A stretch of 56,371 nucleotides of DNA. Source: Octopus bimaculoides. Its lineage: Eukaryota. Position 1 is the first letter of the stretch. Each line of letters begins with the position of its first letter. Of this stretch, positions 53 to 31,742 are shown piece by piece. The position numbers and the translations under genes were made by a program. Below the pieces are notes generated by a model, which made no database searches, was not told where the DNA came from, and saw nothing but the letters and a program-made list of their open reading frames with translations. The stretch is from NCBI RefSeq assembly GCF_001194135.2, contig NC_068998.1, positions 49,945,820 through 50,002,190 on the forward strand, written 5' to 3'.

Positions 53-54
<2 letters not shown>

Positions 55-1452: not shown

Positions 1453-1503
<51 letters not shown>

Positions 1504-1768: not shown

Positions 1769-1802
<34 letters not shown>

Positions 1803-3072: not shown

Positions 3073-3116
<44 letters not shown>

Positions 3117-3364
3117 GAATCTATTTTACCAATTATGCAGTTTCTATCGATTGATAGACAAACCATTATTTTCAAAATTGTCATCTGTAGATGATCTTGA
3201 ATTAAAAAAATTAAAAATTTGAAAGAGACAAGGTAATAAGATTCAGGTGTTTAATCCCTCCCCACCTCCACTTCTTATCACACATTTCACATACATAAGT
3301 TGTGATGAATCAATAGAAATTAAAGAATAACGCAAACAAATTGTCATTGCATGATTTGTTTTTT

Positions 3365-3430
3365 TCAACTTTGCATTAAAAGCAAAAAAGTAACGACGAG
3401 TACTGGAAGCAATACTCTTTGAATATTCAT
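3365..3430 (-). CDS. L2 exon 5, copy A (hydrophobic tail MNIQRVLLPVLVVTFLLLMQS*)
   Basis: Pyrimidine-rich acceptor ttctcgtttcag, then 21 codons and TGA. Homologous to the terminal exons at 5864, 16232, 27513, 41109 and 51310. Confidence 0.65.
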   Translation of the reverse strand: MNIQRVLLPVLVVTFLLLMQS

Positions 3431-3512
3431 CTGAAACGAGAATAGAACACATTTTACATATATGTATTTTCAAAATAATTCGATATGAATTATAATAGTA
3501 TGTTGCTGTTCA

Positions 3513-4521
3513 CAGGAGGGCCGTCTGTAAAGTTCATTGACTAACTATTAAGGAGTAAAGCTAGAGTTGTGCATTCTTGCATTCATTGATTTGAATGTTA
3601 TTCATTAATTACTGCATCGCTTTTTTAAACCATAATTGACATCTAACTGTTCACAGGAACTTCGTAACGTAGCAAGTACACACATTCATGGATAGCAGAG
3701 AGGGGCGTCTATAAATCAAGTAGCCAATGATATTAGAATATCCCGTGAGAAATTCCTGAATATTCTCCTCGCGGAACATGTCATGAGAAAGATTTCTCAT
3801 CTGTGTATCTCCGCCTTCTGATACCTGACCAAAAGCACACCAGACAGATCATGTCACGGGAAAATCTGATACTGTTTAATGCAGGTCCATATGCATTCCT
3901 GGGACGTTGCCTAACACCTTATGTGCTTTGCCTTTATCACTTTAAACTATAGAAAATGACACAAAACTAGCAGTGGAAACAACCCTGCAATCCTACTCAG
4001 AAGAGAGCCAAGTTGTTTCATTTGCAGGGAATTTAACTGACGCAGACTATTGGGATGGAAAATAATTGTGCTCATTGAATACCTTCCAAGCGGTCATAAT
4101 ATCAATGGAAAATACTCTGCCGATTTTCTGAGGTATGTATCAATGGCTATCAACACAAAACACCTGTGAAAAAAATTAGGAAAATGATTTTCGTTTCATT
4201 TGGAAAATACAGCTAGCACAAATGTCATTTGTTGCGATGTCTGCTGAGAAATTGAACTGGTAGATTACTCGACCTATTCTCCTGATTGAGACCCATCTGA
4301 CTATCAATCGATTCCCCAACGTAACAAAAGCAATCTACTGGAATCTTGTATCACACTGATGGTGAAATGATATTCACTGTTTAACATTTTGTGCAACAGC
4401 ATTGAAGCTTTTCCATCCATGGAATGGAAGCATTAAACGCTGCTGGAAAATCAAGTGAACTGCAATGTTTCACAATCCATTAGAGAATTCAGTCTGAGCA
4501 AAGTTTCAGTCAATCCTCGTA
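3513..4521 (+). mobile_element. Degenerate mariner (DD34D) copy A, within intron 4 of the L2 3' module
   Basis: TIR-like ends (caggagggccgtctgtaaagttc / tttcagtcaatcctcgta). Decayed transposase motifs are recognisable (ANDIRISRE, SRENLILF, YWDGK, DYSTYSPD..PSDY) with many stops. Confidence 0.85.
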
Positions 4522-5040
4522 TTTTCATTTTCCTTAGCTAATGTTGTGATTTAGAAGCACATTTAGGAAAATAGTTCCTGATGATGTTGAATTTGAATCT
4601 ACATCATCAGTAGAAAGATTACAGGGATTCAAATGGAGATATCTCAGATCAGTCAGTTCAGTGTGGCGCAAGATGTCAAATACACAGTTTAATCTTACTG
4701 TAGGCGTTGACTAATTCACTTATTGCTATTTCAGTGAGACGTAGTCTACAAAATATGAACCAAAACTTTTGAGACCATAAATCATCTGGTGGAGATTATA
4801 GATGCGTTACTTATTTTATAAAAAAAATTTCTATCCTACAGTAATTCCTGAATTAGAAGAAATAAACTTAATTTTCTTTCCTTCAGGTGGTTAGCGTATC
4901 AGTACATGTAATACGTATCATTGCTTTCGTATTATCGTGATATCAGGACTTTTAAAGTGGTGAAATCTAGTGTTGTTATCTTAAATATTGCAGAACAATA
5001 AAGACAAAAATGAAGCAGTAGTTACAACGAAATGACGTAC

Positions 5041-5067
5041 CTCGTTACGCTTAGAAGTGCTTTTTTT
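5041..5067 (-). CDS. L2 micro-exon 4, copy A (KKSTSKRNE)
   Basis: 27 nt bounded by ttttcag and GAG|gtacgt; phase 0-0; same length as the copies at 7449, 8743, 20472 and 29098. Confidence 0.65.
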
Positions 5068-5522
5068 CTGAAAACAAAAAAATATATTTCTTGAAAGTAA
5101 ATCAAACAAATGACACGCTAACAGATGAATGTGCACAAAACCACACACACACACACGCACACACACATGCACAAGTACAAACACAAACACATACATGCAG
5201 ACACGCACACATGATGTTATACAGGAATTGACAAAAGCACTGTCATGCACACACGGACATCTATATAGATGGCTAGATTGAAGGATACATAAATAAATAG
5301 GCAGGTAGGCAATCAGACTGACAGACAGACAGATATATAGAATGGTAGATAGATAGATAGATAGATAGATAGATTGACAAACAGATAGATACATAGATCG
5401 GCAGATAAATAGATAGATAGATAGGCAGATTTATAGATAGATGGATGGATAGATAGATAGACAGACACACAGACAGACAGACACACAGACAGACAGACAG
5501 ACAGACAGACATACAGACAGAC

Positions 5523-5565
<43 letters not shown>

Positions 5566-5863
5566 TAGATAGATAGACAGAGAAAGAGAGAGAAAGATAT
5601 GATATTTCAATTGTTTGGAAAAGGTACCACCTATTAGGATCATCAACGATATTTTCAACATTTGCTGATTGATATTATTATCAAAAATATCAACTGTAGA
5701 TGTCCTTGAAGTTACAAATTTAAAAAACATATGAAAATGAGAAGGTAATAAGTCCCAGGTGTTTTATTCCTTCCCCACCTATCGCAGATTTCAAATTCAT
5801 AGGTTTTGATGAATAAAACGCAAACAAATCGTTATTGCATGATTCTTTTTATTTAACTTAGCA

Positions 5864-5920
5864 TTAGTAACATAAAAATGTAACGATTATTACAAAAAGC
5901 GATACTCTTTGAATGTTTAT
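5864..5920 (-). CDS. L2 exon 5, copy B (INIQRVSLFVIIVTFLCY*)
   Basis: Acceptor ttctctttccag, then 18 codons and TAA; paralog of 3365-3430. Confidence 0.6.
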   Translation of the reverse strand: MNIQRVSLFVIIVTFLCY

Positions 5921-6000
5921 CTGGAAAGAGAATTGCACACATTTTATATACGTATTTTCAAAATAATTCGATATGAATTACGCAAGCATATTGATGTTCC

Positions 6001-7009
6001 CAGGAGGGTCTTCTGAAAAGTTCATAGGCTGACTATTAAGGAGTAATGCTTGAGTTATCTTGCATGTATAATCTTGCATTCATTAATTTGAACGTCACTT
6101 ATTAAATACTTCATCGCTTTTTTCTGACTGTTCGCAGAAACCTCAAAATGTAGTAAGTACACATGTTCATGGATGACAGAGGGGTGACTATAAATCGAAC
6201 AGTCAATGATATTAGATTATCCCGTGAGAAATTTCCAAATGTTCTCCTCAAAGAACTTAGACTGACAAAGATTTCTTTTCGGTGTGTCTTCGTCTTCTGA
6301 CACCTCACCAAAAACACACCAGGCGGATCACGTCAAGGAAGAACCTCGTACTGTTTGAAGCAGGGCCCATGCATTCCCTGGAAGTTAACTAACATCGCAT
6401 GCGTTGTTGCTATTAATCTCTTCGAACTAGAGAGGAAGACACAATACATGCAGTGGAAAATCCCCAACAGACCTACTCATAAGAAGGCTAACTTGTTTCA
6501 TTTGCAGGGAAGGTGATTGATTTGCAGGGAAGGTGATTGATTTGCAGGTCTTTTGGGATGCAAAGTAATTGTGCTTATCGACTACCTTCAGAATCTCCAT
6601 AATATCAATGGAGAGTATGAGCCCAATTTGCTGAGATACGTACAAATAACTATCAATACAAAACCCCTAAAGCAATGAGGGAAATGTTCGTTGTTTCATT
6701 TGGAAAATGTTACCAGCACAAACGTCATTGATTTCAATCGCTGCTGTTCTTTGAACTGGTTGATTACTTCATCTATTCTCCCGATTTAGACCCATCTAAT
6801 TAATTCCGGTGCCCCAACGTGAAAAAACCATTTGCTGGGATACGGTATCGCACTGATGGCGAAATGATATCCACTGTTGATGAACATTTTGTGCAGCAGG
6901 ACTGAAGCTTTTCGATCCATGGAATCCAAGCACCAAAACGCTGCTGGAAAAATGAGTTTCACAATCCATTTCAGAATTCTTTCTGTGAACGTTTTAGTCA
7001 ATCTTCGTA
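6001..7009 (+). mobile_element. Degenerate mariner copy B
   Basis: Colinear with 3513-4521, including both flanks. Confidence 0.85.
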
Positions 7010-7448
7010 TTTTCGTTTTCCTTTGCTAATGTTGCGATTTACCAGCAGGATTAGTGAACCAGATTATGATGACGTTGAGTTCGAAATCAAAATACCAGTA
7101 GAAAGAGTATAGGATTTCAATGAATATATCTCAGATCAGTCAGTGTAGTGTGGCTCATAAAGACAAAGAGATACAGGATAATATCTGTGTGGGTGATGGC
7201 TAATTTATTGTTTGCAGTATCCGAAGGACGAAGCGTACAAGATATGAACCAAAACACTTGAGGCCATAATACAGGTGCTGAAGATTATAGAAGTATTTCA
7301 TATTTTATGAAAAGACTTTTCCTATCCAACAGTAATTCCTCGACATTTAGATTAATGGAATTTAGTGGTGTTATGTTAAATGTTGCAGAACAAAAGAAAT
7401 AAAAAGATAATAAAAACATGAAGAAGTAGTTACGATGAAATGACGTAC

Positions 7449-7475
7449 CTCCTTAGGCTTAGCTGGGGCAGTTTT
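7449..7475 (-). CDS. L2 micro-exon 4, copy B (KTAPAKPKE)
   Basis: 27 nt bounded by ttttcag and GAG|gtacgt. Confidence 0.6.
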
Positions 7476-7623
7476 CTGAAAATAGAATGTATATATTTCT
7501 TGAAAGTAAATGCAACAAATTACACGCAATGACACATACACACGCACACACAGAGACACACACGCAAAAAAGCGCGCGCGAAAACATGCGCACACACGAT
7601 AATCTATAGAGATCGTTACGTTG

Positions 7624-7667
<44 letters not shown>

Positions 7668-8187
7668 GTATATATATATGTATATATATATATATACATA
7701 CATATATATATATATGTAAATGTATACATATACATATATATANNNNNNNNNNNNNNNNNNNNNNNNNNNNNNNNNNNNNNNNNNNNNNNNNNNNNNNNNN
7801 NNNNNNNNNNNNNNNATATATATATATATATGTATAGAGAGAGAGAGAGTGAGAGATAGAGAGAGTGAGTGAGAGATAGAGAGAGAGAGTGAGAGATAGA
7901 GAGAGAGAGAGAGAAAGAGAGAGAGAGTGAGAGATAGAGAGAGGGAGAAATATGATATTTCAATTGTTATGAAAAGCTACCCCCACTTACTAATTTTCAT
8001 CTGATTACTTGTTCAAAAACTTTAACTTTATATATTTATAGTAATCATTAATGGAAAAAATCCATGCGAACACATTTATGTTCGTCTCTCTTTGTGCCGT
8101 GCCACCTATATTCTGCTCTGTGTCGCAAATAAAGAAAATTAGCTTTTTCTTATTCTCGCGACGTACGTCGTGTAAACACATTGATAA

Positions 8188-8232
8188 AATCCATTAGAGA
8201 ATTCAGCCTGAACGTTTCAGTCAATCCTCTTA
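8188..8232 (+). mobile_element. 3' TIR remnant of mariner copy C
   Basis: Only the terminal ~45 bp (aatccattagagaattcagc...tttcagtcaatcctctta) remains; the rest of the element and exon 5 are deleted. Confidence 0.6.
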
Positions 8233-8742
8233 TATTCATCTTCATCAACGAATGTTGCGATTTACCAGCGAGTTTAGTAAATTAGTTACTGATGACCTTG
8301 AATTTGAAACCAAAACATTAGTAGAAAGGTTACAGGAGTTCAAAAAAACATCGCAAACCAGTCAGTTCAGTGTTACGAAAGATGACAACGACATACAAGT
8401 TAATCTCTCTGTAAGCGATGACTAATTCACTTATTGCTGTTTTAGTAAGACGGAGTGTACAAGATATGAATCAAAACACTTGAGGCATAATATAATTTCG
8501 GGAAGCGTTGTATTCTGCCCCATGTGTTTCATATTTTATAACAAAGTTTCGTGTCCTACAGTAATTTCTGAATCAGAGCAAATGAACTGAATTATTTCTT
8601 TCAAGTAGATAACGTATCCATAAACGTAATAGAAAATCATTGTCTTTATATTATAGTGATATCAGGATTTTAAAGTAATGACATCTTGTGCTGTTAATTT
8701 AAACGTTGCAGAACAAGAAAACAATTTTAAATATATACGTAC

Positions 8743-9240
8743 CACTTTTCGAGGAGTAGTGGTTTGTCTCTGAAAAAACAGAAAGAAATGTAATTTTAGA
8801 ATAAACCCTACGGATTCATATGAATTGTATGTTCACACATGCAGGTTAAAGTTGTGTTTGTAGAAATTAGCATTTTTTTCTTATCAAAAGCCAGTTGCCT
8901 TTGAATATTATTTTGGCTCATGATCTTCGTAGATATTAAAATATTCCAATATCATCGATTAAAATTAAATTGTACAGGCACACCCATTGCAAGTAAAAAT
9001 GTTAGTTTTAAAAATGAGTTTTATTTACAAGCAGAATGAAAAAAACAACTTAATATAGTGATAAAAACTAACTTACGGTGCACATTTCATTCGTTACAAA
9101 CTCTGTACTACAATGAGGAGCGACGGAAGAACGAAAGCAGTTAGCAAACCTTTGGTACGTTCTGCAAATGAAATTTGAGATGGAAATTCCAGAGGTACAT
9201 ATATATATATATACATACGCATACAAACACACCCACCCAC

Positions 9241-9294
<54 letters not shown>

Positions 9295-10202
9295 TGTGGC
9301 GGGGGCTCTTCTCTTGCAAAATATGGCCACCTCTTGAAATTGCGCCTTAGATCTATAATGGTGCCTGATGTGGCCTTTTAAATAAATGTTTTGTCAAGAC
9401 ACACAAATAAATTGCATATCTGCTAGGGAACATCAAGGGCTGCAGTTCTAATATTCGTTGATCGGAAAATGTTTGAAAATTCCGTTAGATATCCTGGGAT
9501 TGTGGTATGAAAGGCATTATGAGGTACAGACAGATACAAAGGCAGAGTAGTTGGTGGTGGTTCATTTTCCATGGGTCTGCGAATGATATTTTGCCCATCA
9601 AAAGAAAGGCATGTTCTCTCACAAACTATTGAGACAAAAAGGTGGTTGGGATACATTTTCTCATTGATCGAAGCATTTATTTCTTTAAACTTATTTTGAG
9701 ATTCGCATGGGTCATTCTGGTTTCATCTAAACAATACTCTTCACTTCACACTTTTGATCCCCATTAGCTCGATCCGGAGCAATGGATTCTATAGCATTTG
9801 GATCATTTCCAAGTGACATCATTATAGTCCATATATATTCGAAGGGCTGGATCAGTGACAATAGGAAGCGATGCCACAACCACCATATTTGAAGAACATT
9901 GCCGCATTTGATAATCATTTATTCCTTATACGCAGTCTTCAAAATCATTTGGTCGGAAAAATATGAATTCTGTAGACGAGGTCAGAACTGTATTGGGGAA
10001 GTAATTTTCGTCAGCTTCAAGTGATTTTTGCAAGTGGGGCCTTGTAAGTCTACTTGATGGATGCCAGAACATTTTAGAAAATGAAGGAGAGTATACTTCA
10101 GTTTAAAAAATAACTTTATATTAAATCTAGAAAAATAATAGATGTATAAAAGAAACCGCTTTCATTATTACAGTAAACAATATATCTGTATATCTTTCTT
10201 TA

Positions 10203-10289
<87 letters not shown>

Positions 10290-11011
10290 NNNNNNNNNNN
10301 NNNNNNNNNNNNNNNNNNNNNNNNNNNNNNNNNNNNNNNNNNNNNNNNNNNNNNNNNNNNNNNNNNNNNNNNNNNNNNNNNNNNNNNNNNNNNNNNNNNN
10401 NNNNNNNNNNNNNNNNNNNNNNNNNNNNNNNNNNNNNNNNNNNNNNNNNNNNNNNNNNNNNNNNNNNNNNNNNNNNNNNNNNNNNNNNNNNNNNNNNNNN
10501 NNNNNNNNNNNNNNNNNNNNNNNNNNNNNNNNNNNNNNNNNNNNNNNNNNNNNNNNNNNNNNNNNNNNNNNNNNNNNNNNNNNNNNNNNNNNNNNNNNNN
10601 NNNNNNNNNNNNNNNNNNNNNNNNNNNNNNNNNNNNNNNNNNNNNNNNNNNNNNNNNNNNNNNNNNNNNNNNNNNNNNNNNNNNNNNNNNNNNNNNNNNN
10701 NNNNNNNNNNNNNNNNNNNNNNNNNNNNNNNNNNNNNNNNNNNNNNNNNNNNNNNNNNNNNNNNNNNNNNNNNNNNNNNNNNNNNNNNNNNNNNNNNNNN
10801 NNNNNNNNNNNNNNNNNNNNNNNNNNNNNNNNNNNNNNNNNNNNNNNNNNNNNNNNNNNNNNNNNNNNNNNNNNNNNNNNNNNNNNNNNNNNNNNNNNNN
10901 NNNNNNNNNNNNNNNNNNNNNNNNNNNNNNNNNNNNNNNNNNNNNNNNNNNNNNNNNNNNNNNNNNNNNNNNNNNNNNNNNNNNNNNNNNNNNNNNNNNN
11001 NNNNNNNNNNN

Positions 11012-11059
<48 letters not shown>

Positions 11060-11338
11060 ATATGAACCGAACGGCCACAATGCATAATAGAATATAAGAC
11101 ATTTCAACCTACATCGCTTAATGCCCAGTTCATCAATTGGGAACATGATTTAACGAGATGAAATTCTAATTTTTGTATGTCCTCGGTTTGTTGTCCGTTC
11201 TACTTTATGTCCGTTCACCAGTGTGTCCATTCGGTTTCTCGGCTCATGTTTCTTCACAAAAGTGCATTCGGCTTCCTGTCCGTGTAACTTATATATACAC
11301 ACACACACATACATACATACATACATACATACATACAT

Positions 11339-11377
<39 letters not shown>

Positions 11378-13752
11378 NNNNNNNNNNNNNNNNNNNNNNN
11401 NNNNNNNNNNNNNNNNNNNNNNNNNNNNNNNNNNNNNNNNNNNNNNNNNNNNNNNNNNNNNNNNNNNNNNNNNNNNNNNNNNNNNNNNNNNNNNNNNNNN
11501 NNNNNNNNNNNNNNNNNNNNNNNNNNNNNNNNNNNNNNNNNNNNNNNNNNNNNNNNNNNNNNNNNNNNNNNNNNNNNNNNNNNNNNNNNNNNNNNNNNNN
11601 NNNNNNNNNNNNNNNNNNNNNNNNNNNNNNNNNNNNNNNNNNNNNNNNNNNNNNNNNNNNNNNNNNNNNNNNNNNNNNNNNNNNNNNNNNNNNNNNNNNN
11701 NNNNNNNNNNNNNNNNNNNNNNNNNNNNNNNNNNNNNNNNNNNNNNNNNNNNNNNNNNNNNNNNNNNNNNNNNNNNNNNNNNNNNNNNNNNNNNNNNNNN
11801 NNNNNNNNNNNNNNNNNNNNNNNNNNNNNNNNNNNNNNNNNNNNNNNNNNNNNNNNNNNNNNATATATATATATATAATGGTGGTACGACGCATGTCGTA
11901 TCACCTGATCTTTGTTCCAAGAAATGTCTTCTGTTAGTGGAAAGAGTCTATACGCCCACACAGTTCACCATAGTTTGTATCAGTGTGGTCTTCATGGACA
12001 CATTCCTCGTAGAAAGCCTCTCCTGACTGAAAAGCATAAATCAAGTCGTCTTTCTTTTGCCGAAACCTATGTGCGTAAGGTGAAGGGGTTATGGAATAAT
12101 TTCAAAGCAGAAGAATGAATTTTTATCAGTTAAAATGGTAAAGATATTGCCTTGGCCTACCATGTTACCTGATGAGTTTTGAAAAGGAATGTTGAGGAGA
12201 AAAGCCCGTAATTTAACACAGATAAAAGACAACGTTCAGGATGAATAGAGGTTGATTTCATCGGTTGTAGGCGGAATATTAGTCGACTCGATGCCCTCTT
12301 CCTCCTTTTTCAAGTCTCAAATAAACGCTTTCCGAGAGTGGGAGGTAATGTGTAGTCGACCTCTCAAGATTTCAGTTTTAGGAATTAGAATGGGAAAGGT
12401 AAGGAAAGTGATGAAGAAAAAATAAAGATTATTGTTCCCTAACGGGGTACAGTTATAACTGTAAAGTTTGGACATAGCAAGTGATCAAATTCCTATGAAT
12501 TTGTACATACATTCACACCTGTAGAACCAAATCTTATATTCTGTCTAATTTCATGTTCTGGATAAACGAATATTAAATAATGGTACAACATTCATAAATT
12601 AGAAAATTGAAATTAAAATGTAAAAAATAATTTGGTTGCGGTACTGTTTATAATTTAATCTATTCTCTATATATATTTAAAGACACCACATGAATGACTT
12701 GCGTAATAGCATGACTATTGTATATATTTAACTGGAAATCACTTTGTATGATATAAATTATGTAATAATGCAGGATCTGCTTAAATATATTTTTGAGTAT
12801 CTTCCAGGATTTTGCAGATTTTTTTTCTTGATTCCTTCAATAAGATTATTCAAAAGTTTTATTTTTAGCGAATTACATTGCCGAGTGGCTACGTTAGATA
12901 TCCTTCCTAATCAGTGTTAAAATGGATGAAGTGTTTTTCCTGATATATGTAAGTATTATCGATTTTATAAGAGAAACAGCTTTTATAGATAATATATACA
13001 CGTATCTTACCATTTATTTTAGTTGGTATTAATAGAGATTATCATCATGCTATTAACATTAGAACAACATTCAGAAACACCAGTAACAGTGTAACATAAT
13101 TGTTTCCCTTCATCCATCATCATTAATTTGAATAAAAGACATAATGACCATAAAGAAGGTCTCTTGACAGACACCGTTAGATAGGTTTTATTATCGAGTC
13201 TTAGTGTTTTCTTCTAGCAGCAGTATCGTGGTCTTGGTAATGAAGTCGGTTTTAAAGCGTTCGTCTATCCGTCCATGTTTTTTTTACGCAGTGTTACAAA
13301 GTTTAAAAATTAGTAACGTCAAAGCTTGTAAATATAATAAATTCTGAGAAAGTGCGTGTAATGTGATTGAGGAAATCCATGCTGTCCCTTATACAGATGG
13401 GTCTTAATGAGCATACACTTTTGAGGGGTACACAGAAAAGATGCTTCACTTGTATTTTTGCGGCTAGAGTTCCAGCAACGGTCGGTCACAATTTGCAGTC
13501 AGTATCTTTGTGTATTTGTTCCTTATAACTTTCTCGTGTTATTCCATCTGCAAAATACCCTAAAAATCAACTCTTCTAAACAAATTAAAATCCAACTGAT
13601 TCCCAAGAAAGAACAAACTTTTTATTGTTATCATATTGTTTTGAAATTGTATCTTGAAAAGATCAGTGAAACGAAAGGAAACGCTAACAAGAGTTTATCC
13701 CAAATTCTGACTGCTACCCTTTTCTCAATACAGACACAAACACACTTATATT

Positions 13753-13815
<63 letters not shown>

Positions 13816-14106
13816 GGATATATATATGCATTTATACACTTATGTATATATTTATGTGTATTTGGAGAAAAAGGTGTGAGATGAATATATAGAATATTAA
13901 TGTATACATACCTTTATTGGTTTATAGCTTGACAATTATTTTATTTTACAAAGAAGAAATATTAATTGAAAGCACATAGCTAGATTAGTATTTAGACTGA
14001 TAGTACAGAGAACTATATAAAAACTATTGCTTTATTAATTAGTAAAGTAATAATTGTGATACATACCACATGCGAAAATGAAAATGAAGGTAAATATTTT
14101 CATCAT
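8743..14106 (-). CDS. Locus L2 5' part: exon 1 14106-14067 (MMKIFTFIFIFAC), exon 2 not located, exon 3 9161-9077 (TYQRFANCFRSSVAPHCSTEFVTNEMCT), micro-exon 4 copy C 8769-8743 (RQTTTPRKV)
   Basis: Exon 1 has ATG, a hydrophobic core and a G|gtatgt donor. Exon 3 is exactly 85 nt with a tttcatttgcag acceptor, gtaagt donor and C-x8-C-x9-C. Exon 2 was not found in the sequenced part; two N gaps lie in the interval. Could be a pseudogene. Confidence 0.6.
9440..10110 (+). mobile_element. Degenerate mariner transposase C-terminal half (different subfamily)
   Basis: Translates to QPPYLKNIAAFDNHLF..RSLQNHLVGK..DEVRTVL..ENEGEY, matching the mariner HPPYSPDLAPSDYHLF..GDY signature. Confidence 0.75.
11880..12110 (+). 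mobile_element. Tc1 transposase fragment (DNA-binding/linker region)
   Basis: CGLHGHIPRRKPLLTEKHKSSRLSFA..LWN matches the Tc1 GLxGRxPRRKPLL..RLxFA..W motif. Confidence 0.75.
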
Positions 14107-16231: not shown

Positions 16232-19200
16232 TTAATAACATAACGAAGTAACGACAACTCCAAGAAGGAACATTCTTTGAATGGTCATCTGAAAAGAGAA
16301 TAGCACACATTTTATAGGCACATTTGATATTCACATATATAAAGCATTTTCTATTCAAATTAATTCGATATGAATTACACTAGTATATTGCTGTTTATAG
16401 CAGAGTAGACTGAACATTTATAGGTCGACTATTAAGGAGTAATGCTAGAGTTATGCATTCTTTTGACCCTTCTTTATTTATTACTGGACTCATTATATTT
16501 TTACTGAAATCTGACTGTTCACAGATACATGATAACGTAGCAAGTACACATGTTCGTGGATGACATGCGAGTAGCATTAAATCAAACCATTTCGATAGGT
16601 TTATATCTACAGAAATTTTAGCCAGCACTGACTTTTTTCTACATTGTTTCGTATTGCGACATCATTTGTAAATTAGGTCGAAGATAAAAGTTGGTGGGTT
16701 TTGCCGCTTCATCGGCACTCATCTAACTCACTCTCGTCTCCAAATACATTGCTTATATAGCTACCGCATACAGCGGTGTTACTTTATTCAATTTACCAAT
16801 TTACATATTAATCGAATTCATGGAGCTACTATGTAATTATTTATGGCTTGAGGGCATTTGGTATTTCGTTATGCAACTGTCATTTCCTATAAATTCTATA
16901 TTTTTTTTTTTATGAGACAATAACACATCCTACTGTGTTAGCAGTGCTCTTTTCATTGTTTTGATTGGGTTATTTCAACAGAAATTGTAGCCAGAAATGG
17001 TATTTGGTACAGGGCTTTCGTATCAAGACATCAGATGTAAATAAACAATTAGATTGAAGACGAAGATGGGTAATGAGTGCACATGCCATTTTCAGCGGTT
17101 TTCGCCCCTTCATCATCACGCATCGAATGCATAGGAAATATACGCGCGCACTCACGCATAAAAACTGTCCTTTACACGTATAGATTATGGTTTCATAGCG
17201 AATACTTCGCGCCAAGAAGTCATTAATATAAATCAAATAGTGGGTGGCATAGAATATCCCGAAAGAAATTTCCGAATATTCTCTTCAATGGATTGGCATT
17301 ACGAAGATTTCTTTTTGGTGCGTCTACGTCTTCCGACAACTGATCAAAAGCGAGCCAGGCAGATCACTTCACCGGAAAACCTGATATTGCTTGAAGCAGA
17401 TCCAGTTGCTTTCCGTGGACTTTAACTAACACAGCACACGTGTTGTCTTTATCACTTTGTAATTGAGAAAACGACATAATACATGCAGTGGAAACACCGA
17501 TACACACCTATACCCATGAAGGCCTAGGTTGTTTCATTTGCAGGTACATTGATAGACGAAGATTATTTGGATGCAATCTATTTGTGTCTATCGACTACAC
17601 TCAAAAAGGCTATACCATCAAAACATAGTGCTATGCCAAATTACTAACGTAGATCGAAATATCTATCAAGAGAAAACACTCATGGAGACTAAAGAAATGC
17701 ATTTTACTTCATAAGAAAATGCTCCCGCACAAACGTCACCGATTTCAATGGCTGCCCTGCTTTGAACTGGTTGAGTATCCAGCTTATTCATCTGATTTGG
17801 ACCCATTTGCCTAGCATTATTTCCCTCACGTGTAAAAAAAACAGTTTGCAAAGATCCTGAAATTATATCCACTCTTGATCGACTTCTTGCGCAACAGGAT
17901 TACAGCATTTTCATCCGCGGAATCCAAGCACTAAAACATCACGGCGGTATTCAGTGAATTGCGATGTTTCATAATCTATAAGAGAATTCGGTCTGTGAAG
18001 GTTTCAGTTAATCCTCCTAATATTCATCTTCATTAACTAATGTTGTGATTTACCATCAAGTGGACCAGTTCCTGACGACGTTTAATTTGAAACCAAAACA
18101 GCAGGAGAAGGATTATAAGAATTGAATGATGATATTGCAAACCAGTCAAGTGACGCAAGATGGTAAAGAGATACATGCTCAAACTTTCGGTATGCGATTA
18201 CTAATTCATGTCTCGCTATTTCAGTAAAACGAAGTGATCCAGATAAGAAGCAAAATCCTTGAGGCCACAACAGAACTGCTGGAGATTATACAAGTGTTCT
18301 ATATGTTACAATAACTTTACCCATCTTAATAAAATTCCTGAATTAGAGCAAATAAACGTCACTATATTTTTCAGCCTGGTAACGTCTTGGTAAACGTAAT
18401 ATTCAATTAGTTTATCCGAATTAACTTGATATCCGATTTCCTATAGTAATAGAATGTAGTATTGGTAATTTAATTATTTTAGAACAATGAAAAGCTTTGA
18501 AGTAGTTATGACGTACCTCGTTACGCTTTGAATTTGACCTGCTTTTTTTCTCCTAAAATCAAAAATAATGTATTTCTTGAAAGAAAATCCAACAAATTAG
18601 AATTTAATGTATGTTCACATACATTAATGCACGAATGAGTTTAATTACCAATTTCTTAAAAATAAGTTGTAGGAATAATAAAGACCATCATGTTTAGTTT
18701 TTTACGTCAGTTGTTCTTGACTACCATTATTATTCATGATCATTGTAAAAATTATGACAGAATGACGCAAGCAAACCGTTATTACATTAATCTCTTTATT
18801 TAACTTTATATTTATAATATAATCGAGTACCGACAAATTCATAAGTTGACTATTAAGTAGTAACACTAGAGCTATACATTCTTGCATGCATGGAGTTGAA
18901 CGCTACTTTTTAAATACTGCATTGCTTTTTTTGCAAATTAACTGACGTCTGACTATTCACAGAGACTGGAAAAGGTAACACGTACACATGTTCATAAATG
19001 ACAGACGAGCGACTATAAATCAGATTATTTTGTTAATTGTACTTCTACAGAAATCATGGCCGGCACTGATTCTTTGCTACGACGTTTCGTATCGAGACGT
19101 CTTATGTAAACAATGAGATCAAAGACAAAAGGTGTAATGAGTGTATAAGTCATATTTCGGAGGTTTTGTCCAATCGTCAGCACCCATCTAGCCCACACCT

Positions 19201-21643
19201 GCCTCCGAATATAAGGCTTATGTTACTACCGCATGCAACTGTATTAAATTATTGGATTTACTGATTTGCATATTAAACGCATTCCAGGAGCTGAGCAGTG
19301 ATAACGAAATGCAACGTGATTTTCATTTATACAAAACATGTAATATATTTTATAGTATATCATAGTTGCATAACAAAATACCACGTTTCTAAAGGTCATT
19401 ATAAATCAAATAGCCAATAATATTAGAATATACCGTGAGGAACTTCAGAATATTTTCCTCAAGGAACTTAGCATGACGTGGATTTATTCTTGGTGTGTCT
19501 ACGTCTTCTGACAACTGACCAAAAGCAAACTAGACCGATCAAGTCACCAGCAAATCTGATATTGCTTGAAGCAGATCTAGCTGCTTTCCGTGAACGTTAA
19601 CTAACACCGCGTGAATGCTGCCTTTATCACTTAGAACCCAAGATAATGGCACTATACACGCAGTAGAAACACATGTAGAGATTACTTTTAAGCTTGTCAA
19701 GCTTGTTTCATTTGCAGGTAAGTTGATAGACGAAGACTATTTGCATGCAACGTAATTGTGTTTAATGACTACCTTCAAAACGGCCATAATATTCACCAGT
19801 GATAGTGAAATGATATCCCCTGACGATGAAAATTTTTTGCAACAACACTATTGCATTGTTATCCATGGAATCCAAGCACTAAAACACTTCGGTGATAATC
19901 AGTGCACTGTAATGTTTCACAATCTATTAGCGATGTAAGACTTTGAACGTTTCAGTCAATCCTCGTATTTTAATTTTCATTATCTAATGTTGAGATTTAT
20001 CAGTAAATTTAGAGAAGAAATTCCTGATGACATTGAAACCAAACCAGCAAGTGAAATATTATAGGATTTCAATGCTGATATGTCAGAGCAGTCAGTTCCG
20101 TGAGGCGCAAGATGACAAAGAGTTACAGGTTCAAAATCCCTATAGGCGATGATTAATTCATTTCTTACTAACTCAGTAAGACGAAATACTGAAGATGTGA
20201 AGCAAAGAAAACTTGAGGCCACAATAGAACTACTGGAGATTATGCCAAAGTTCCAAATTTTACCACAACTTTTCCTATCATAAATTAATTCCTGAATAAC
20301 CTTAAATATGTATTTTCACCTTGGTAAAGTATTAGTAAAGGCAATATGAAATTAGTGTATTCGTATCAACGTGATATCAGATTTTCTTTAGCAATGGAAT
20401 GTAGTACTTGTAACTGATACGTTGCAGACGAAAAAAAGAATTGAAAGAATAATTGCAGGGAAATGACGTACCTTGTAAACCTTAGTAGCGCGTTCTGTCT
20501 GGAAACGAAAAGAAAATATATTTCTTCAAACAAAATGCAGCAGGTTAGCATTATCATTTATTGTATATTCACAAATACAGGGTGTCAACAAAGTCTGGGT
20601 TCATCGGGATTAACACATACTTTATGAAATTATTATTTCTTATATTTAATTGTTCATGTTATGATTTTATTTACTCCATCTACCCAGACCTTGTGGACAC
20701 CCTGTACATGGTAATGATATGCGCATGAATTCCATTATACAAGACTCAGTATAAATATTATCTAATGTAGATTATATGCCCATTGCGTATTACAGTAAAC
20801 TTATCGGCTGTATCAACCTATGTTAACGTAGCAATCACTCGGCGATATTTTTTGTGATAAAACGTAATGAAAACATCTCCTGGCACTTCTTTTGTTTACA
20901 AATTCATTAAAAATAGGTTGCAGGAAATGATAAAGGATTGTGTTTGTAGAAATGACCGTTTCTTTTCTTTTCTTTTTTTTTTTTTTTTCAGAAATCAGTT
21001 TTTCTTCAATTCCATATTTTTTTTTGTTTTCATTGCAGAAATAACTTTAATAGACCATATCAAAATATTTCAACCATGTTTGTTAAAATTATATTATACA
21101 AACACTGTCGTTGCGAACTAAAACCTTAGTTTAAAAAATTAGTTTTAAGAACATTCATAGACCAAGACAAAAAATTATAGTGATAACAAATAACTTACGA
21201 AACACTCGTGAGACTTTGAAAATATCGAATAACACTTAGGGTCGGTGGATTTACGAAAGCATTGAATAAAATCTTGGTACACCCTGCAAATGAAAGCTGA
21301 GAGGTTGAGAGTGAAATTCCAGGGTTTTTTTTTCTATTCTTTTACTTGTTTCAGTCATTTCACTACGGCCATGCCGGAGCACCACCTTTAGTCGAACAAA
21401 TCAAACCCCAGTACGTATTCTAAAGGTCTATATTTACGAACCGGTAAGTTACGCGGACGTAAACACACCGACATCGGTTGTCAATAGATGGTGGGGACAA
21501 ACAGAGACACACACACACATATATGACGTGCTTCTTTCAGTTTCCATCTACTAAATCCACTCACAAGAATTTGGTCGGCCACAGGCTATAATAGAACACA
21601 CACAGGTTCCACGCACTGGGACTGAACCAGAAACATATATATG

Positions 21644-21677
<34 letters not shown>

Positions 21678-22638
21678 TATATATATGTATATATACCCGC
21701 ATATAATTGCATGTTAATGTTCATTTTTTATCAAGTTCTAATAGAAAGTATTTGAGATAATTCTGATAGGTCAGTCTATGCGCCTGAAGAGTATAAAAAT
21801 AATTATTCTTAATCCAGGAAGAATATTATTGCCACAAACTTCGTGGTTTCATCCGGTTAAGCTAACGTCGGGAGATTTTAACGTAGCTGAGAATACAAAA
21901 GGCGATGATTAACTTCAATGCATGGCAGCCTAACTGCGGCTTGGTTCAGTGAAACATGAGAAATCTCTTGCACTACTGATATTTTATTATCCAATTCAAA
22001 AATTGTTTTGGAATATTCTTTCTGCGAGTTCTAAGATCCTTTCTCTATTGTTTGTTCTGTTTTACCTTCTCCATCAGAGGAAGCGCAATGGCACAGTGGT
22101 TAGGGCAGCGGATTCGTGGTCATAGGGTCGTTGTTTCGATTCCCAAACCGCGCGTTGTGAGTGTTTATTGAGCGAAAAGATTTATGCGTAATTAAGTTTC
22201 GTCTAAGCTTTTAATGAAGACATATATATATATATTTCGCCTGAATTTCTATCCGCTATTAAATTACGTTTGTATAATTTTGACCAGTTTCAAAATTCGA
22301 TGAAATATATTTTGCATGTATTTGATACTTACCAGCAGTTGTCGTGGTCGTTAACATAGTTTTTATACTCTTTCGCACACGTTTCTTGCGCCAAAACTAA
22401 ACAGTTTTTCTCTACCTCGGACTCTGATGAAACTATACATACGAAAAATCGTGTATTATTTATGTTAATATTTCGTGTTAACAGAAATTCCTAGCAGAAA
22501 AGCGAGCAACTGCATTTGGTAGAAATTTAATTCCAGTTTGTAAGATATATTTCTCTGGACATACAGATATTAACTTCTCCATCCTACTTACAGACACATA
22601 CACACAGTCAGATACAGAAAAACACATCTGTTTCTCCT

Positions 22639-22705
<67 letters not shown>

Positions 22706-23130
22706 ACAGGCAGTTCAAGTGGTGTACAGTTATTTTATATTCAGGAAAAGAAGGCAGTCAGAATTTTGGATAATCCTTTCGTTGCGCTTTCGTTCGTTTA
22801 ACCGAAATCTTCAAGACGAGAATAATACCAAACTGATAAAAGCACAACCTTTCATTGTTCTTTTATATGAATTGGATGTATGTTTCTTTTGTTTAGAAAA
22901 TGTTTATGTATGTTTCTTTTGTTTAGAAATTTCTTATATGCGTATCATTATCTGTTTATATTTAGACAATTATTTAATTATACAATGAATAAATGCAAAC
23001 TAAAACCACATCGCTAATATTGAGATTGTTTGTTATACTATATAAACATCATTGCCTTTTTTATTAGTATGGAAAAATTCAGATACTTACCACATACAAG
23101 AATTAAAAGGAACAGAAAGATCTTCAACAT
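16232..23130 (-). CDS. Locus L3, complete model: exons 23130-23091, 22432-22333, 21283-21199, micro-exon 20498-20472 and/or 18552-18517, terminal exon 16288-16232
   Basis: In-frame splice gives MLKIFLFLLILVC-V-SSESEVEKNCLVLAQETCAKEYKNYVNDHDNC-W-VYQDFIQCFRKSTDPKCYSIFSKSHECF-[TERATKVYK and/or EKKSRSNSKRNE]-MTIQRMFLLGVVVTSLCY*. All junctions are GT-AG, and exon sizes 40/100/85/27(36)/57 match the paralogs. Confidence 0.8.
16398..18019 (+). mobile_element. Degenerate mariner copy D with a nested insertion (~16590-17230)
   Basis: Colinear with copy A; includes RLPTTDQKRARQITSPENLILLEADPVAF; interrupted at the ATAAATCA site. Confidence 0.8.
18830..19967 (+). mobile_element. Degenerate mariner copy E (5' end and central part deleted; nested insertion ~19025-19400)
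   Basis: Colinear with copy D; internal deletion near 19795; 3' TIR tttcagtcaatcctcgta. Confidence 0.75.
20576..20706. mobile_element. 131-bp Tc1/mariner-type MITE
   Basis: TIRs TACAGGGTGTCAACAAAGTCTGGGT / ACCCAGACCTTGTGGACACCCTGTA with TA ends. Confidence 0.8.
21335..21635 (-). mobile_element. SINE of a second family; a related 3' half lies at ~39565-39750 on +
   Basis: Reverse-strand B-box-like end (GTTCAGTCCC) and the tail GACTGAAACAAGTAAAAGAA, shared with 39565-39750. Confidence 0.55.
22075..22180 (+). mobile_element. tRNA-derived SINE head (truncated)
   Basis: About 85% similar by eye to 475-575. Confidence 0.75.
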
Positions 23131-30288: not shown

Positions 30289-30320
<32 letters not shown>

Positions 30321-31711
30321 NNNNNNNNNNNNNNNNNNNNNNNNNNNNNNNNNNNNNNNNNNNNNNNNNNNNNNNNNNNNNNNNNNNNNNNNNNNNNNNN
30401 NNNNNNNNNNNNNNNNNNNNNNNNNNNNNNNNNNNNNNNNNNNNNNNNNNNNNNNNNNNNNNNNNNNNNNNNNNNNNNNNNNNNNNNNNNNNNNNNNNNN
30501 NNNNNNNNNNNNNNNNNNNNNNNNNNNNNNNNNNNNNNNNNNNNNNNNNNNNNNNNNNNNNNNNNNNNNNNNNNNNNNNNNNNNNNNNNNNNNNNNNNNN
30601 NNNNNNNNNNNNNNNNNNNNNNNNNNNNNNNNNNNNNNNNNNNNNNNNNNNNNNNNNNNNNNNNNNNNNNNNNNNNNNNNNNNNNNNNNNNNNNNNNNNN
30701 NNNNNNNNNNNNNNNNNNNNNNNNNNNNNNNNNNNNNNNNNNNNNNNNNNNNNNNNNNNNNNNNNNNNNNNNNNNNNNNNNNNNNNNNNNNNNNNNTATA
30801 TATATACATAAATATATATATATATACATATTAATATAATATATACAGAGAGAAATAGAGAGATGTATAAAAAGAAAGCAGAAATATCGACATACAAACA
30901 TCAAATTACTAAAACAATATCAATTCCTAACAATATCAAATGCATAGAAGCTAGAATTGTATGTGTGTGTACGTGTGTGTGTGTGTGTTTATGTGTGTGT
31001 TTATGTGTGTGTTTTTTTTCTTGTGTGTGTTTGTATTGCCTATAATTTCGTCTCCGTGAGATTACAATGTGCGTGATTAAAATTACATGTGCATTTTTAT
31101 GTAAATTTGTTAATTTCAAGTTTGCAGTAAATATATTAATTTGCAGATATTTGATACTCACCTGCATTCCTTTCTCCTGTGTCCATATTCTTCAAATTCC
31201 TTTGGACACTCCTCTTTCGCTACTTTTATGCATTCTTTCTCAATGGTGCTGGTCGATGAAACTATACATACAAAAATTTATTTACAATTCATAAAACCCC
31301 CTAAATACTTATTTTGGGGTTTAGAATTAACCGAATTTCCTAGCAGAAAAGAGAGCAAGTTCATTTCATAGATATTTTATTCCAGTTAAAATGAAATATT
31401 TATATGAAAACACTGATATTTAAATTCACTCTTCTATTTAGAGAAAGGCAGACACACATATAAACACATACATACACACAGACACATCAAACCCAAACAT
31501 ATATGTGTGTCTTTGCACGCGTGTGTGTGTATGTGTGTGTGTGTGTGTGTGTGTGTNNNNNNNNNNAAATAATATATATTTGAAGAAACACAACGAACAT
31601 TTATTAGGTTATAGCAGTACGTATTAATAATAATAAGAAGAAGACGAAGAAGAAGACGAAGAAGAAGACGAAGAAATCGAAGAAGAAGTAGAAGAAGAAG
31701 AAGAAGATCAT

Positions 31712-31742
<31 letters not shown>

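What the first reader, a model, noticed from the sequence alone, without database searches (positions are those of the whole stretch)
3365..9161. L2 has three tandem micro-exon 4 copies and two exon 5 copies behind one exon 3: candidate combinatorial C-termini
Downstream of the single exon 3 (9161-9077) lie micro-exons C (RQTTTPRKV), B (KTAPAKPKE) and A (KKSTSKRNE), all 27 nt and phase 0-0 with intact splice sites. Two intact tails follow (5920-5864 and 3430-3365). No exon 1-3 copies were found between them, so the ~2.4-kb duplicated unit is a 3' module rather than a whole gene. Any combination keeps frame. Inference: alternative or mutually exclusive splicing could vary the stalk and anchor signal; alternatively these are inert duplication leftovers.
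Basis: partly seen in the sequence, partly recalled or inferred. Interest (0 to 1): 0.72.

Follow-up and report, generated by a model that had tools for sequence, protein, structure and literature searches.

The report
Duplicated 3' exon modules, octopus gene
An unannotated copy of an octopus-only gene for a small cysteine-rich, membrane-anchored protein has its last two exons (a 27-base micro-exon and the anchor exon) tandemly duplicated; the duplications are old and real, this kind of event is well known, and it is unproven whether this copy is expressed at all.

Summary
The window is Octopus bimaculoides chromosome CM046618.1.

"L2" is the last of three similar paralogues of an Octopus-only orphan family. 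Family proteins have a signal peptide, a 6-Cys helical domain, a disordered stalk and a hydrophobic C-tail. The ancestral gene has 5 exons.

In L2 the 3' module (27-nt micro-exon, ~1.5-kb intron, tail exon, 3' spacer) is present three times, at 22-31% divergence. Copy C lost 1.33 kb, including its tail.

The N gap at 7743-7815 lies in an intronic (TA)n microsatellite. Homology is collinear on both sides with matching spacing, so the gap hides nothing relevant.

Serial inclusion with alternative last exons is the best-supported reading:
- The neighbouring paralogue carries two tandem micro-exons in series in both RefSeq isoforms.
- Two other paralogues have RefSeq isoforms that switch or skip the tail exon.
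- Nothing that could enforce mutually exclusive choice was found.

L2 itself has no RefSeq protein model. Its exon 2 is missing from the assembled sequence (two gaps lie in that interval), and without it the frame breaks. This is an ordinary tandem exon duplication of modest interest.

The parts
14067..14106 (-). L2 exon 1. Encodes the signal peptide MMKIFTFIFIFAC, phase 1, donor GTG|GTATGT. It is intact.
   Evidence: The promoter, exon 1 and the start of intron 1 (14451-13890) are 72-75% identical to paralogues N and T.
9390..13890 (-). Interval where L2 exon 2 should lie (100 nt in N and T). No homologue is present in the assembled bases. The interval contains N gaps at 10290-11011 and 11378-11862.
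9077..9161 (-). L2 exon 3, 85 nt. Keeps the three family cysteines with spacing C-x8-C-x10-C and ends in phase 0.
8743..8769 (-). Micro-exon C (RQTTTPRKV), 27 nt, phase 0-0, tttctgttttttCAG|..|GTACGT.
8188..8742 (-). The retained proximal part of unit C's intron. It is homologous to all five other units, and the homology ends exactly at 8188.
7985..8187 (-). 203-nt filler at the deletion junction of unit C. It stands in place of 1331 nt (the equivalent of 6962-5632 in unit B), which include the distal intron, the tail exon and the start of the 3' flank.
   Evidence: It has no convincing homology to any tail region.
7476..7984 (-). Microsatellite spacer and acceptor region before micro-exon B. 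It holds the N gap 7743-7815 inside (TA)n and is collinear with the B-to-A spacer on both sides of the gap.
7449..7475 (-). Micro-exon B (KTAPAKPKE), 27 nt, phase 0-0.
5921..7448 (-). Intron between micro-exon B and tail B, 1528 nt. It is 77.5% identical to the corresponding intron of unit A.
5864..5920 (-). Tail B (INIQRVSLFVIIVTFLCY*), a complete internal terminal exon with acceptor ctctttcCAG.
5848..5853 (-). AATAAA 11 nt after the tail B stop codon. A second AATAAA lies at 5768-5763.
5041..5067 (-). Micro-exon A (KKSTSKRNE), 27 nt. It is the closest match to the last micro-exon of N (EKKSRSNSKRNE).
3431..5040 (-). Intron between micro-exon A and tail A, 1610 nt.
3365..3430 (-). Tail A (MNIQRVLLPVLVVTFLLLMQS*). 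A 2-nt indel near its 3' end shifts the frame, replacing ..LCY* with ..LLLMQS*.
3250..3255 (-). ATTAAA 110 nt after the tail A stop codon. The proximal AATAAA that the other tails keep is lost here.
16232..23130 (-). Comparator paralogue N, which is RefSeq LOC128249925. Exon 1 is 23130-23091, exon 2 is 22432-22333 and exon 3 is 21283-21199. The micro-exons are 20498-20472 and 18552-18517, and the tail is 16288-16232. A disabled internal tail remnant lies at 18836-18794.
27513..32063 (-). Comparator paralogue T, which is RefSeq LOC128249868 (105 aa). It has the single-module ancestral layout: exon 1 at 32063-32021, exon 2 at 31261-31162, exon 3 at 29673-29589, the micro-exon at 29124-29098 and the tail at 27575-27513.

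Best explanation
**What it is.** L2 is the most downstream of the three closely similar family paralogues in this window (T, N, L2). The cluster itself is larger, with further family exons upstream in the window and more genes beyond it. The family is Octopus-restricted and has no known domain. Its proteins have a signal peptide, a roughly 60-residue 6-Cys helical domain, a disordered Lys/Ser/Thr/Pro stalk and a hydrophobic C-terminus laid out like a GPI-attachment signal or tail anchor.

**Ancestral structure.** The ancestral gene has five exons. Exon 4 is a 27-nt phase 0-0 micro-exon that encodes the stalk. Exon 5 encodes the hydrophobic tail and is followed by a poly(A) signal.

**What happened in L2.** The whole 3' module (micro-exon, ~1.5-kb intron, tail exon, microsatellite spacer; about 2.49 kb) was tandemly duplicated twice, long ago. 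A 1.33-kb deletion then removed the tail of the first copy, C.

**How it most likely works (inferred, not shown).**
- If L2 is transcribed, the micro-exons are spliced in series. Each duplication then lengthens the stalk by 9 residues, as in paralogue N.
- The two surviving tails act as alternative last exons.
- The default product ends at the proximal tail B: exon 3-C-B-tail B, using AATAAA at +11.
- A minor product skips tail B and runs exon 3-C-B-A-tail A.
- Only the A form keeps the family's conserved S-x-S-K-R-N-E / M-x-I-Q-R junction, which looks like a GPI omega region.

**Caveat.** Whether L2 is a working gene depends on an exon 2 that is either hidden in an assembly gap or lost.
For: **Shown**
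- Coordinates, frames and splice sites are as stated.
- The module repeats with a ~2.49-kb period.
- Jukes-Cantor distances are A-B 0.30, A-C 0.33 and B-C 0.40, against 0.38-0.43 between genes. The L2 copies therefore group together and are old.
- Unit C's deletion junction lies in contiguous sequence.
- T has one module and N has two. In N a ~190-nt deletion removed the acceptor and 5' half of the internal tail.
- RefSeq LOC128249925 X1 and X2 both read ...HECF-TERATKVYK-EKKSRSNSKRNE-MTIQR..., so the tandem micro-exons are used in series.
- LOC128249942 has two 30-nt micro-exons in series.
- LOC128249941 X1/X2 use a proximal or a distal tail exon. LOC128249931 X2 skips the tail exon.
- AG and GTACGT are kept in all six micro-exon copies, and GTACGTCATTTC is 11-12/12 identical in five of them. 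The exon bodies are only 44-67% identical, against about 70% mean pairwise identity across the aligned micro-exon and proximal intron.
- Both L2 tails are strongly hydrophobic, with Kyte-Doolittle 11-residue maxima of about 3.0 and 2-5 residues after the hydrophobic window.
- In the AlphaFold model the Cys domain is helical (pLDDT 80-92), the stalk scores below 50, and the tail is helical.

**Inferred**
- At about 0.15 substitutions per site per lineage, keeping all ~25 essential splice and start bases of the seven L2 exons by chance has a probability of order 1%. This points to past selection for splicing competence.
Against: - There is no transcript evidence for L2 of any kind.
- No RefSeq protein is called across window 16231-6232, and no database protein matches L2's exons.
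- Exon 2 is not in the assembled sequence. Splicing exon 1 directly to exon 3 gives a stop inside exon 3.
- A versus B coding sequence shows no purifying selection:
  - the micro-exons are 18/27 identical;
  - the tails are 35/45 identical, the same as the intron;
  - five nonsynonymous codon differences stand against two synonymous;
  - there is one frameshifting indel at the end of tail A.
- Unit C has lost the TTTCAAGAAATAT upstream motif and the extended donor context.
- A dead exon-1 copy lies just upstream, so the locus is rearrangement-prone.
- The RefSeq isoforms used as precedent are computed models. Their read support could not be checked here.
Confidence: 0.55

Rival explanations
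1. Inert leftovers. L2 is a decaying, non-coding paralogue that has lost exon 2. Its duplicated 3' modules are never translated, and the intact frames and splice sites are survivors from an earlier functional period.
For: - There is no RefSeq protein model over window 16231-6232 and no matching protein anywhere.
- Exon 2 homology is absent from 13890-9390. A piece of N's intron 1 appears inverted at 13574-13730.
- Exon 1 spliced to exon 3 is out of frame. The upstream-ATG frame used by N isoform X2 is also closed in L2.
- A-B coding divergence equals or exceeds intron divergence, and tail A carries a terminal frameshift.
- Unit C is truncated.
- A dead exon-1 copy (donor GT changed to AT) lies next door.
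Against: - All seven L2 exons keep their start codon, splice dinucleotides and open frames, at 0.27-0.40 substitutions per site from their duplicates.
- The three cysteines of exon 3 are conserved.
- 1207 unread bases lie exactly where exon 2 would be.
- Stalks and anchors also evolve fast in the annotated paralogues. N versus T micro-exons are 13/27 identical. Weak coding conservation is therefore not diagnostic.
Confidence: 0.3
2. Regulated cassette choice. Exon 3 (or C) is joined to one of several micro-exons or modules, in a mutually exclusive or combinatorial way. This would resemble the tandemly duplicated 3' variable regions of Drosophila PGRP-LC and pip.
For: - The exons are all 27 nt and phase 0-0, so any combination stays in frame.
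- Modules B and A each carry their own terminal exon and poly(A) signal.
- Splice signals are conserved while the exon bodies diverge.
- Tandemly duplicated terminal regions with mutually exclusive use are described in PMC9013439.
- The family has RefSeq isoforms with alternative tails.
Against: - No enforcing mechanism was found. The introns are long, all sites are GT-AG, and a frameshift penalty is impossible.
- No docking/selector complementarity exists apart from (TA)n.
- The conserved upstream motif is also present before both micro-exons of N, which are included together.
- No RefSeq isoform retrieved for the five other annotated O. bimaculoides genes skips a micro-exon.
Confidence: 0.12
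3. Assembly artefact. The repeated modules are collapsed or duplicated haplotypes, or a mis-join across the N gap.
For: The assembly is a draft with 14 gaps in this window, one of them inside the finding.
Against: - The copies differ by 22-31% and by 20 indels per 1.5 kb. That is far beyond allelic divergence.
- Homology to the B-to-A spacer is collinear with matching spacing across the gap.
- The same kind of module duplication is seen independently in N.
Confidence: 0.03

Closest known systems
Tandem exon duplication giving alternative last exons or 3' variable regions (reviewed in PMC9013439; Drosophila PGRP-LC, pip, CG42235)
   Same: A block holding an internal exon, its intron and a terminal exon with its own stop codon and poly(A) signal is repeated in tandem behind a shared upstream donor. 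The copies have the same length and phase. Paralogues in the same cluster have annotated isoforms that use a proximal or a distal tail exon.
   Different: There is no transcript evidence for L2. No competing RNA structures were found. In the best-documented paralogue the duplicated internal exons are used together, in series, after the internal terminal exon was deleted. There the outcome is stalk lengthening, not substitution.
Schistosome micro-exon genes (MEGs; PMC10526429)
   Same: Both are lineage-restricted genes for small secreted or surface proteins. Both have a conventional first exon for the signal peptide and symmetric micro-exons (multiples of 3) separated by long introns. In both, the micro-exon bodies evolve fast and the protein segments they encode are disordered.
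   Different: L2 has only 1-3 micro-exons, encoding about 10-25% of the protein, whereas in MEGs micro-exons encode most of it. The core here is a structured 6-Cys domain on ordinary exons. There is no sequence relationship (no Pfam hit). Exon skipping, the hallmark of MEG variation, is not seen in the family's RefSeq isoforms.
GPI-anchored small cysteine-rich surface proteins such as Ly6/uPAR (resemblance in layout only)
   Same: The order of parts is the same: signal peptide, small disulfide-rich domain, short polar stalk, then a C-terminal hydrophobic segment with almost nothing after it.
   Different: This family has 6 cysteines rather than 8-10. It is predicted all-helical rather than a three-finger beta fold. 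It lacks the CCxxxxCN motif and has no Pfam UPAR_LY6 hit. GPI attachment is untested.

Membership tests
Mutually exclusive exons derived from tandem exon duplication | Adjacent homologous exons of the same length and phase | tested here: met
   C, B and A are each 27 nt and phase 0-0. Homology is proven through the flanking introns (E = 1e-105 to 0). The exon bodies are 44-67% identical.
Mutually exclusive exons derived from tandem exon duplication | A mechanism that enforces one-of-N inclusion: a short intron (steric block), incompatible splice-site types, a frameshift on double inclusion, or docking/selector RNA pairing | tested here: not met
   The introns are 1267 and 2381 nt, all sites are GT-AG and exon lengths are multiples of 3. 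No complement of the conserved upstream motif lies in intron 3, and the only inverted repeats are (TA)n.
Mutually exclusive exons derived from tandem exon duplication | Transcripts carry exactly one exon of the array | not testable with these tools
   No L2 transcript or protein is in any searchable collection. Paralogue N includes both of its tandem micro-exons in both RefSeq isoforms, which argues against exclusivity.
Alternative last exons from duplicated 3' modules | Two or more terminal exons, each with its own 3' splice site, stop codon and poly(A) signal, behind a common donor | tested here: met
   Tail B has CAG, TAA, and AATAAA at +11 and +96. Tail A has CAG, TGA, and ATTAAA at +110.
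Alternative last exons from duplicated 3' modules | Both ends are used in transcripts | not testable with these tools
   This is untested for L2. The only precedent is in paralogues: LOC128249941 X1/X2 and LOC128249931 X1/X2.
Schistosome-type micro-exon genes | Most of the coding sequence is built from many symmetric micro-exons | tested here: not met
   There are one to three micro-exons of 27-36 nt in a coding sequence of about 105-130 codons. The domain lies on exons of 100 and 85 nt.
Schistosome-type micro-exon genes | Sequence membership in a MEG family | tested here: not met
   No Pfam family is hit. HMMER over 1.84 billion representative proteins finds only Octopus proteins.
GPI-anchored proteins | N-terminal signal peptide plus a C-terminal hydrophobic stretch with no cytoplasmic tail | tested here: met
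   Exon 1 encodes MMKIFTFIFIFAC. The tails have Kyte-Doolittle 11-residue maxima of 2.95-3.03, with 2-5 residues after the window.
GPI-anchored proteins | An omega site of small residues about 9-11 residues before the hydrophobic stretch, and experimental GPI attachment | tested here: inconclusive
   By eye, A-tail A (S-T-S KRNEMNIQR) and N (S-N-S KRNEMTIQR) fit. B-tail B (A-K-P KEINIQR) fits poorly. No GPI predictor or assay was available.
Ly6/uPAR three-finger domain | 8-10 cysteines in a beta-rich three-finger fold with a C-terminal CCxxxxCN motif | tested here: not met
   The family has 6 cysteines, an all-helical model and no Pfam hit.

The most novel reading that the evidence does not exclude
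This octopus-only family could use a duplicating 3' cassette (stalk micro-exon plus anchor exon) as a regulated switch. One gene would then make surface proteins with different stalk lengths and different membrane attachment: GPI-like, other hydrophobic anchors, or soluble. L2 (three stalk exons and two anchors) would be the richest case and would be expressed from an exon 2 hidden in the assembly gap.
Probability: 0.15. Interest if true: 0.5.

Novelty: new member of a known kind. Interest (0 to 1): 0.3.

Why it matters
If L2 is expressed, the T-N-L2 series shows three stages of one process within 30 kb:
- T has one module.
- N has two modules, with the internal terminal exon disabled by a 190-nt deletion.
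- L2 has three modules. One internal tail was removed by a 1.3-kb deletion and one is still intact.

This is a clean natural example of how tandem duplication of a 3' module first creates alternative last exons and then, after loss of the internal terminator, lengthens a protein linker.

It also flags two practical points:
- The family is a lineage-restricted octopus gene family of unknown function. In the protein collections searched it is represented by six RefSeq genes in O. bimaculoides and one apparently fused model in O. vulgaris.
- The L2 locus is probably incompletely assembled or annotated.

None of this changes current understanding of splicing or exon duplication.

Tried and rejected
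- **Protein search with concatenated L2 exons** over 5.8 billion sequences found nothing.
- **Family profile search** found only the known O. bimaculoides paralogues. No orthologue of L2 and no transcript-derived protein turned up.
- **O. vulgaris comparison.**
  - The 109-kb locus (L002) contains the LOC128249931 orthologue and other family exons, but no detectable L2, N or T orthologue and no collinear DNA.
  - The single 92% match (window 479-788) is a tRNA-derived SINE, not synteny.
- **Fold identification.** Foldseek against the PDB gave no hit better than E = 1.6. Pfam gave nothing above threshold.
- **Transposon relic in intron 4.** I suspected a decayed transposase on the plus strand. 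Pfam on the three plus-strand frames of T's intron found nothing. The segment is not repeated elsewhere in the window or in three other loci. I treat it as ancestral intron.
- **Shared tail deletion in unit C and N's first unit.** I suspected one shared event, which would make the two-module state ancestral. Only a 26-nt AT-rich match supports it. The deletions differ in extent (1.33 kb versus about 190 nt), and distances group C with A and B. I rejected it as unsupported.
- **Docking/selector RNA structures.** None were found.
- **Rfam.** There are no matches in the window.
- **Extra modules downstream of tail A** (window 1-3150). None were found.

Full report
**Source of the window**

The neighbouring gene's protein is RefSeq LOC128249925 of Octopus bimaculoides. 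The locus fetched for it (GCA_001194135.2, chromosome CM046618.1, 49,952,051-49,979,105, reversed) is base-for-base the reverse complement of window 6232-33286. Window position 1 is therefore CM046618.1:49,945,820. The window is AT-rich, full of microsatellites and has 14 N gaps.

**Observation**

| Element | Coordinates | Size | Encodes |
|---|---|---|---|
| Exon 3 | 9161-9077 | 85 nt | one open frame, ends in phase 0 |
| Micro-exon C | 8769-8743 | 27 nt | RQTTTPRKV |
| Micro-exon B | 7475-7449 | 27 nt | KTAPAKPKE |
| Micro-exon A | 5067-5041 | 27 nt | KKSTSKRNE |
| Tail B | 5920-5864 | 57 nt | INIQRVSLFVIIVTFLCY* |
| Tail A | 3430-3365 | 66 nt | MNIQRVLLPVLVVTFLLLMQS* |

- Each micro-exon has a pyrimidine-rich CAG acceptor and a GTACGT donor.
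- The repeats are real homologues. Units A and B align over about 1.7 kb (E = 0) with a period of about 2.49 kb, and C aligns to A over 547 nt (E = 1e-105).
- No exon 1, 2 or 3 copy lies among them.
- At 22-31% divergence the copies cannot be haplotype or assembly duplicates.

**The gap at 7743-7815**

- It lies in the intron between C and B, inside a (TA)n run, and no reading frame crosses it.
- On both sides the sequence is collinear with the paralogous B-to-A spacer: 7984-7838 matches 5631-5487, 7642-7590 matches 5299-5247, and 7566-7414 matches 5159-5006.
- The anchors flanking the gap are 196 nt apart, against 188 nt in the paralogous spacer.
- The gap therefore hides no exon or module.
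- The junction that explains the missing third tail (homology stops at 8188 and resumes at 7984) is in read sequence upstream of the gap.

**The gene and its family**

Two complete paralogues upstream give the gene model.

- T (32063-27513) is RefSeq LOC128249868, 105 aa. It has five exons: signal peptide (43 nt), 100 nt, 85 nt, one 27-nt micro-exon (KSCHFNGKE) and a tail (MTIQRVSLPLFGVNLVMYLN*).
- N (23130-16232) is LOC128249925. It has the same first three exons, then two micro-exons (TERATKVYK, 27 nt, and EKKSRSNSKRNE, 36 nt) and one tail.

Family features:

- Members share six cysteines (C-x7-C-x13-C-x8-C-x8-C-x9/10-C), a stalk of variable length and a conserved start of the tail.
- An AlphaFold model of N has a helical Cys domain (pLDDT 80-92), a stalk below 50 and a helical tail.
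- Foldseek finds no PDB match and Pfam finds nothing.
- HMMER over 1.84 billion representative proteins finds only six O. bimaculoides proteins and one O. vulgaris protein. The O. bimaculoides genes are all on this chromosome.
- This is an Octopus-restricted orphan family, arranged as a tandem cluster that continues beyond the window.

**Anatomy of L2**

- Exon 1 (14106-14067, MMKIFTFIFIFAC, GT donor) and its promoter region are intact and homologous to N and T.
- Exon 3 keeps the three cysteines of that exon.
- Exon 2 has no homologue in the assembled bases.
  - Homology to N and T stops at 13890 and resumes at 9389.
  - The interval holds two gaps of 722 and 485 N.
  - Without exon 2 the frame breaks: exon 1 spliced to exon 3 stops inside exon 3. 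The upstream-ATG frame that N isoform X2 uses is also closed in L2.
- The annotation calls no protein gene across window 16231-6232, and no protein in 5.8 billion matches L2's exons.

**History of the modules**

- Over the 500-640 nt shared by all six units (micro-exon plus proximal intron), Jukes-Cantor distances are A-B 0.30, A-C 0.33 and B-C 0.40.
- Distances between genes are 0.38-0.43, and N1-N2 is 0.38.
- The L2 copies therefore group together. The duplications are old and probably arose within L2, or were homogenised there, independently of N's duplication.
- Unit C lacks the 1331 nt that correspond to 6962-5632 of unit B: the distal intron, the tail and the start of the 3' flank. A 203-nt filler takes their place.
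- In N, the internal tail was disabled differently. A deletion of about 190 nt removed its acceptor and 5' half and left the 3' half and AATAAA at 18836-18794.
- T, N and L2 thus show one module, two modules with a dead internal terminator, and three modules with one terminator removed and one intact.

**Selection**

- AG and GTACGT are kept in all six micro-exon copies, and GTACGTCATTTC is 11-12/12 identical in five of them.
- The 27-nt exon bodies are only 44-67% identical, at or below the roughly 70% mean pairwise identity of the aligned region.
- Between A and B:
  - the micro-exons are 18/27 identical;
  - the first 45 nt of the tails are 35/45 identical, the same as the intron (77.5%);
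  - five codon differences are nonsynonymous and two are synonymous;
  - a 2-nt indel changes the end of tail A from ..LCY* to ..LLLMQS* and removes the proximal AATAAA.
- Splice signals therefore look maintained while the peptide sequence is free to vary. That is expected of a disordered linker, but it also fits recent loss of function.
- My rough estimate that all ~25 essential bases of the seven L2 exons would survive neutrally with about 1% probability is an inference, not a test.
- Some intron blocks are as conserved as the donor site, so splice-site conservation alone is not strong evidence.

**How it probably works**

No mechanism for mutually exclusive choice is present:

- The introns are 1.27 and 2.38 kb, all sites are GT-AG and exon lengths are multiples of 3.
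- No docking/selector complementarity exists, only (TA)n.
- The conserved TTTCAAGAAATAT motif upstream of B and A also precedes both of N's micro-exons, which RefSeq joins in series in both isoforms.
- LOC128249942 likewise has two 30-nt micro-exons in series.

Alternative tails do have precedent in the family:

- LOC128249941 X1 and X2 join one 27-nt micro-exon to a proximal or a distal tail exon.
- LOC128249931 X2 skips the tail exon for a short downstream exon (PFA*), giving a form without an anchor.

The most likely behaviour of an expressed L2 is therefore serial inclusion of C and B, ending mostly at the proximal tail B. Tail B has a strong acceptor and AATAAA at +11. A minority of transcripts would skip tail B and continue through A to tail A (ATTAAA at +110).

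Only the A-tail A end keeps the S-x-S-KRNE/M-x-IQR junction shared with N, which by eye fits a GPI omega region. The B-tail B junction (A-K-P-KE/INIQR) fits poorly. This last point rests on general knowledge of GPI signals and is untested.

**Comparison with known systems**

- This is a case of tandem exon duplication extended to a terminal module, the class reviewed in PMC9013439. That review also describes mutually exclusive 3' variable regions in Drosophila PGRP-LC and pip.
- It resembles schistosome micro-exon genes (PMC10526429) only in having symmetric micro-exons in a lineage-restricted secreted protein. It fails their defining feature, a coding sequence built mostly of micro-exons.
- It is not Ly6/uPAR.

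**Verdict**

Alternative C-termini are plausible, while mutually exclusive or free combinatorial use is not supported.
- L2's own status as a gene is unresolved, because exon 2 is unassembled or lost.
- This is a new member of a known kind of event and of modest interest.

Noticed in passing
window 14949-15250 (minus strand): There is a second copy of the family's promoter and exon 1, between N's tail and L2's exon 1. The ATG is kept, but the donor GT has become AT (GCATGCG|ATATGT against GCATGTG|GTATGT). It looks like a dead 5' module, so L2 has partial duplications at both ends.
   Followed up: partly
window 13574-13730 versus 22898-22738: A 160-nt piece of N's intron 1 appears in L2 in inverted orientation, just where homology that should lead to exon 2 is lost. 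This could be an inversion breakpoint or an independently inserted small repeat. It was not resolved.
   Followed up: no
window 18794-18836 (minus strand): This is a remnant of an internal tail exon in paralogue N. A deletion of about 190 nt removed the acceptor and the 5' half of the exon, while the 3' half and AATAAA remain. It explains why N uses its two micro-exons in series.
   Followed up: yes
window ~48090, ~37950, 46126-46245, ~41115-41170, ~51316-51370 (minus strand): More members of the same family lie upstream in the window. There are exon-1-like sequences (MKISAFIFVLL...), an exon-2-like sequence (CDKLAKIGCPETY...) and tail exons (RPMQTLFLTVLVVNVLMQI*, RSVETLFLTVISFNILMQI*). Their gene models were not built.
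   Followed up: partly
L004 13970-15529; L003 12760-14440: RefSeq isoforms of two other paralogues change the C-terminus. LOC128249941 X1/X2 use two different hydrophobic tail exons (14352-14468 or 15443-15529) after one 27-nt micro-exon. LOC128249931 X2 skips the tail exon (13814-13873) for a 'PFA*' exon at 14429-14440, giving a form without an anchor.
   Followed up: yes
RefSeq LOC128249925 isoform X2 (window 23206-21199): N's isoform X2 skips exon 2. It reads from an upstream ATG through exon 1 in another frame into exon 3, and so lacks the signal peptide and half the Cys domain. It is probably a non-productive transcript model. The same frame is closed in L2.
   Followed up: partly
window 479-788; 21332-21524; 22100-22170: These are copies of a tRNA-derived SINE (..GGGAATCGAAAC..CTAACCACTG..). 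The copy at 479-788 is 92% identical to one in O. vulgaris (L002 75868-76177). That match could be mistaken for synteny.
   Followed up: yes
20-35 nt upstream of the micro-exons at 5067, 7475, 18552, 20498 and 29124: The motif TTTCAAGAAATAT (0-1 mismatch) is conserved before five of the six micro-exons and is absent before micro-exon C. It might be a branch-point region or a splicing enhancer.
   Followed up: partly
window 27026-27055: T's 3' spacer has an N gap in the homologous (TA)n microsatellite, like the gap at 7743-7815. These spacers are a recurrent assembly-breaking repeat.
   Followed up: no
O. vulgaris L002 10001-99175 (protein CAI9735849.1): The only O. vulgaris protein of the family is a 302-aa model spanning 89 kb. 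It strings together three family domains, so it appears to be a fused gene model across a tandem cluster.
   Followed up: partly
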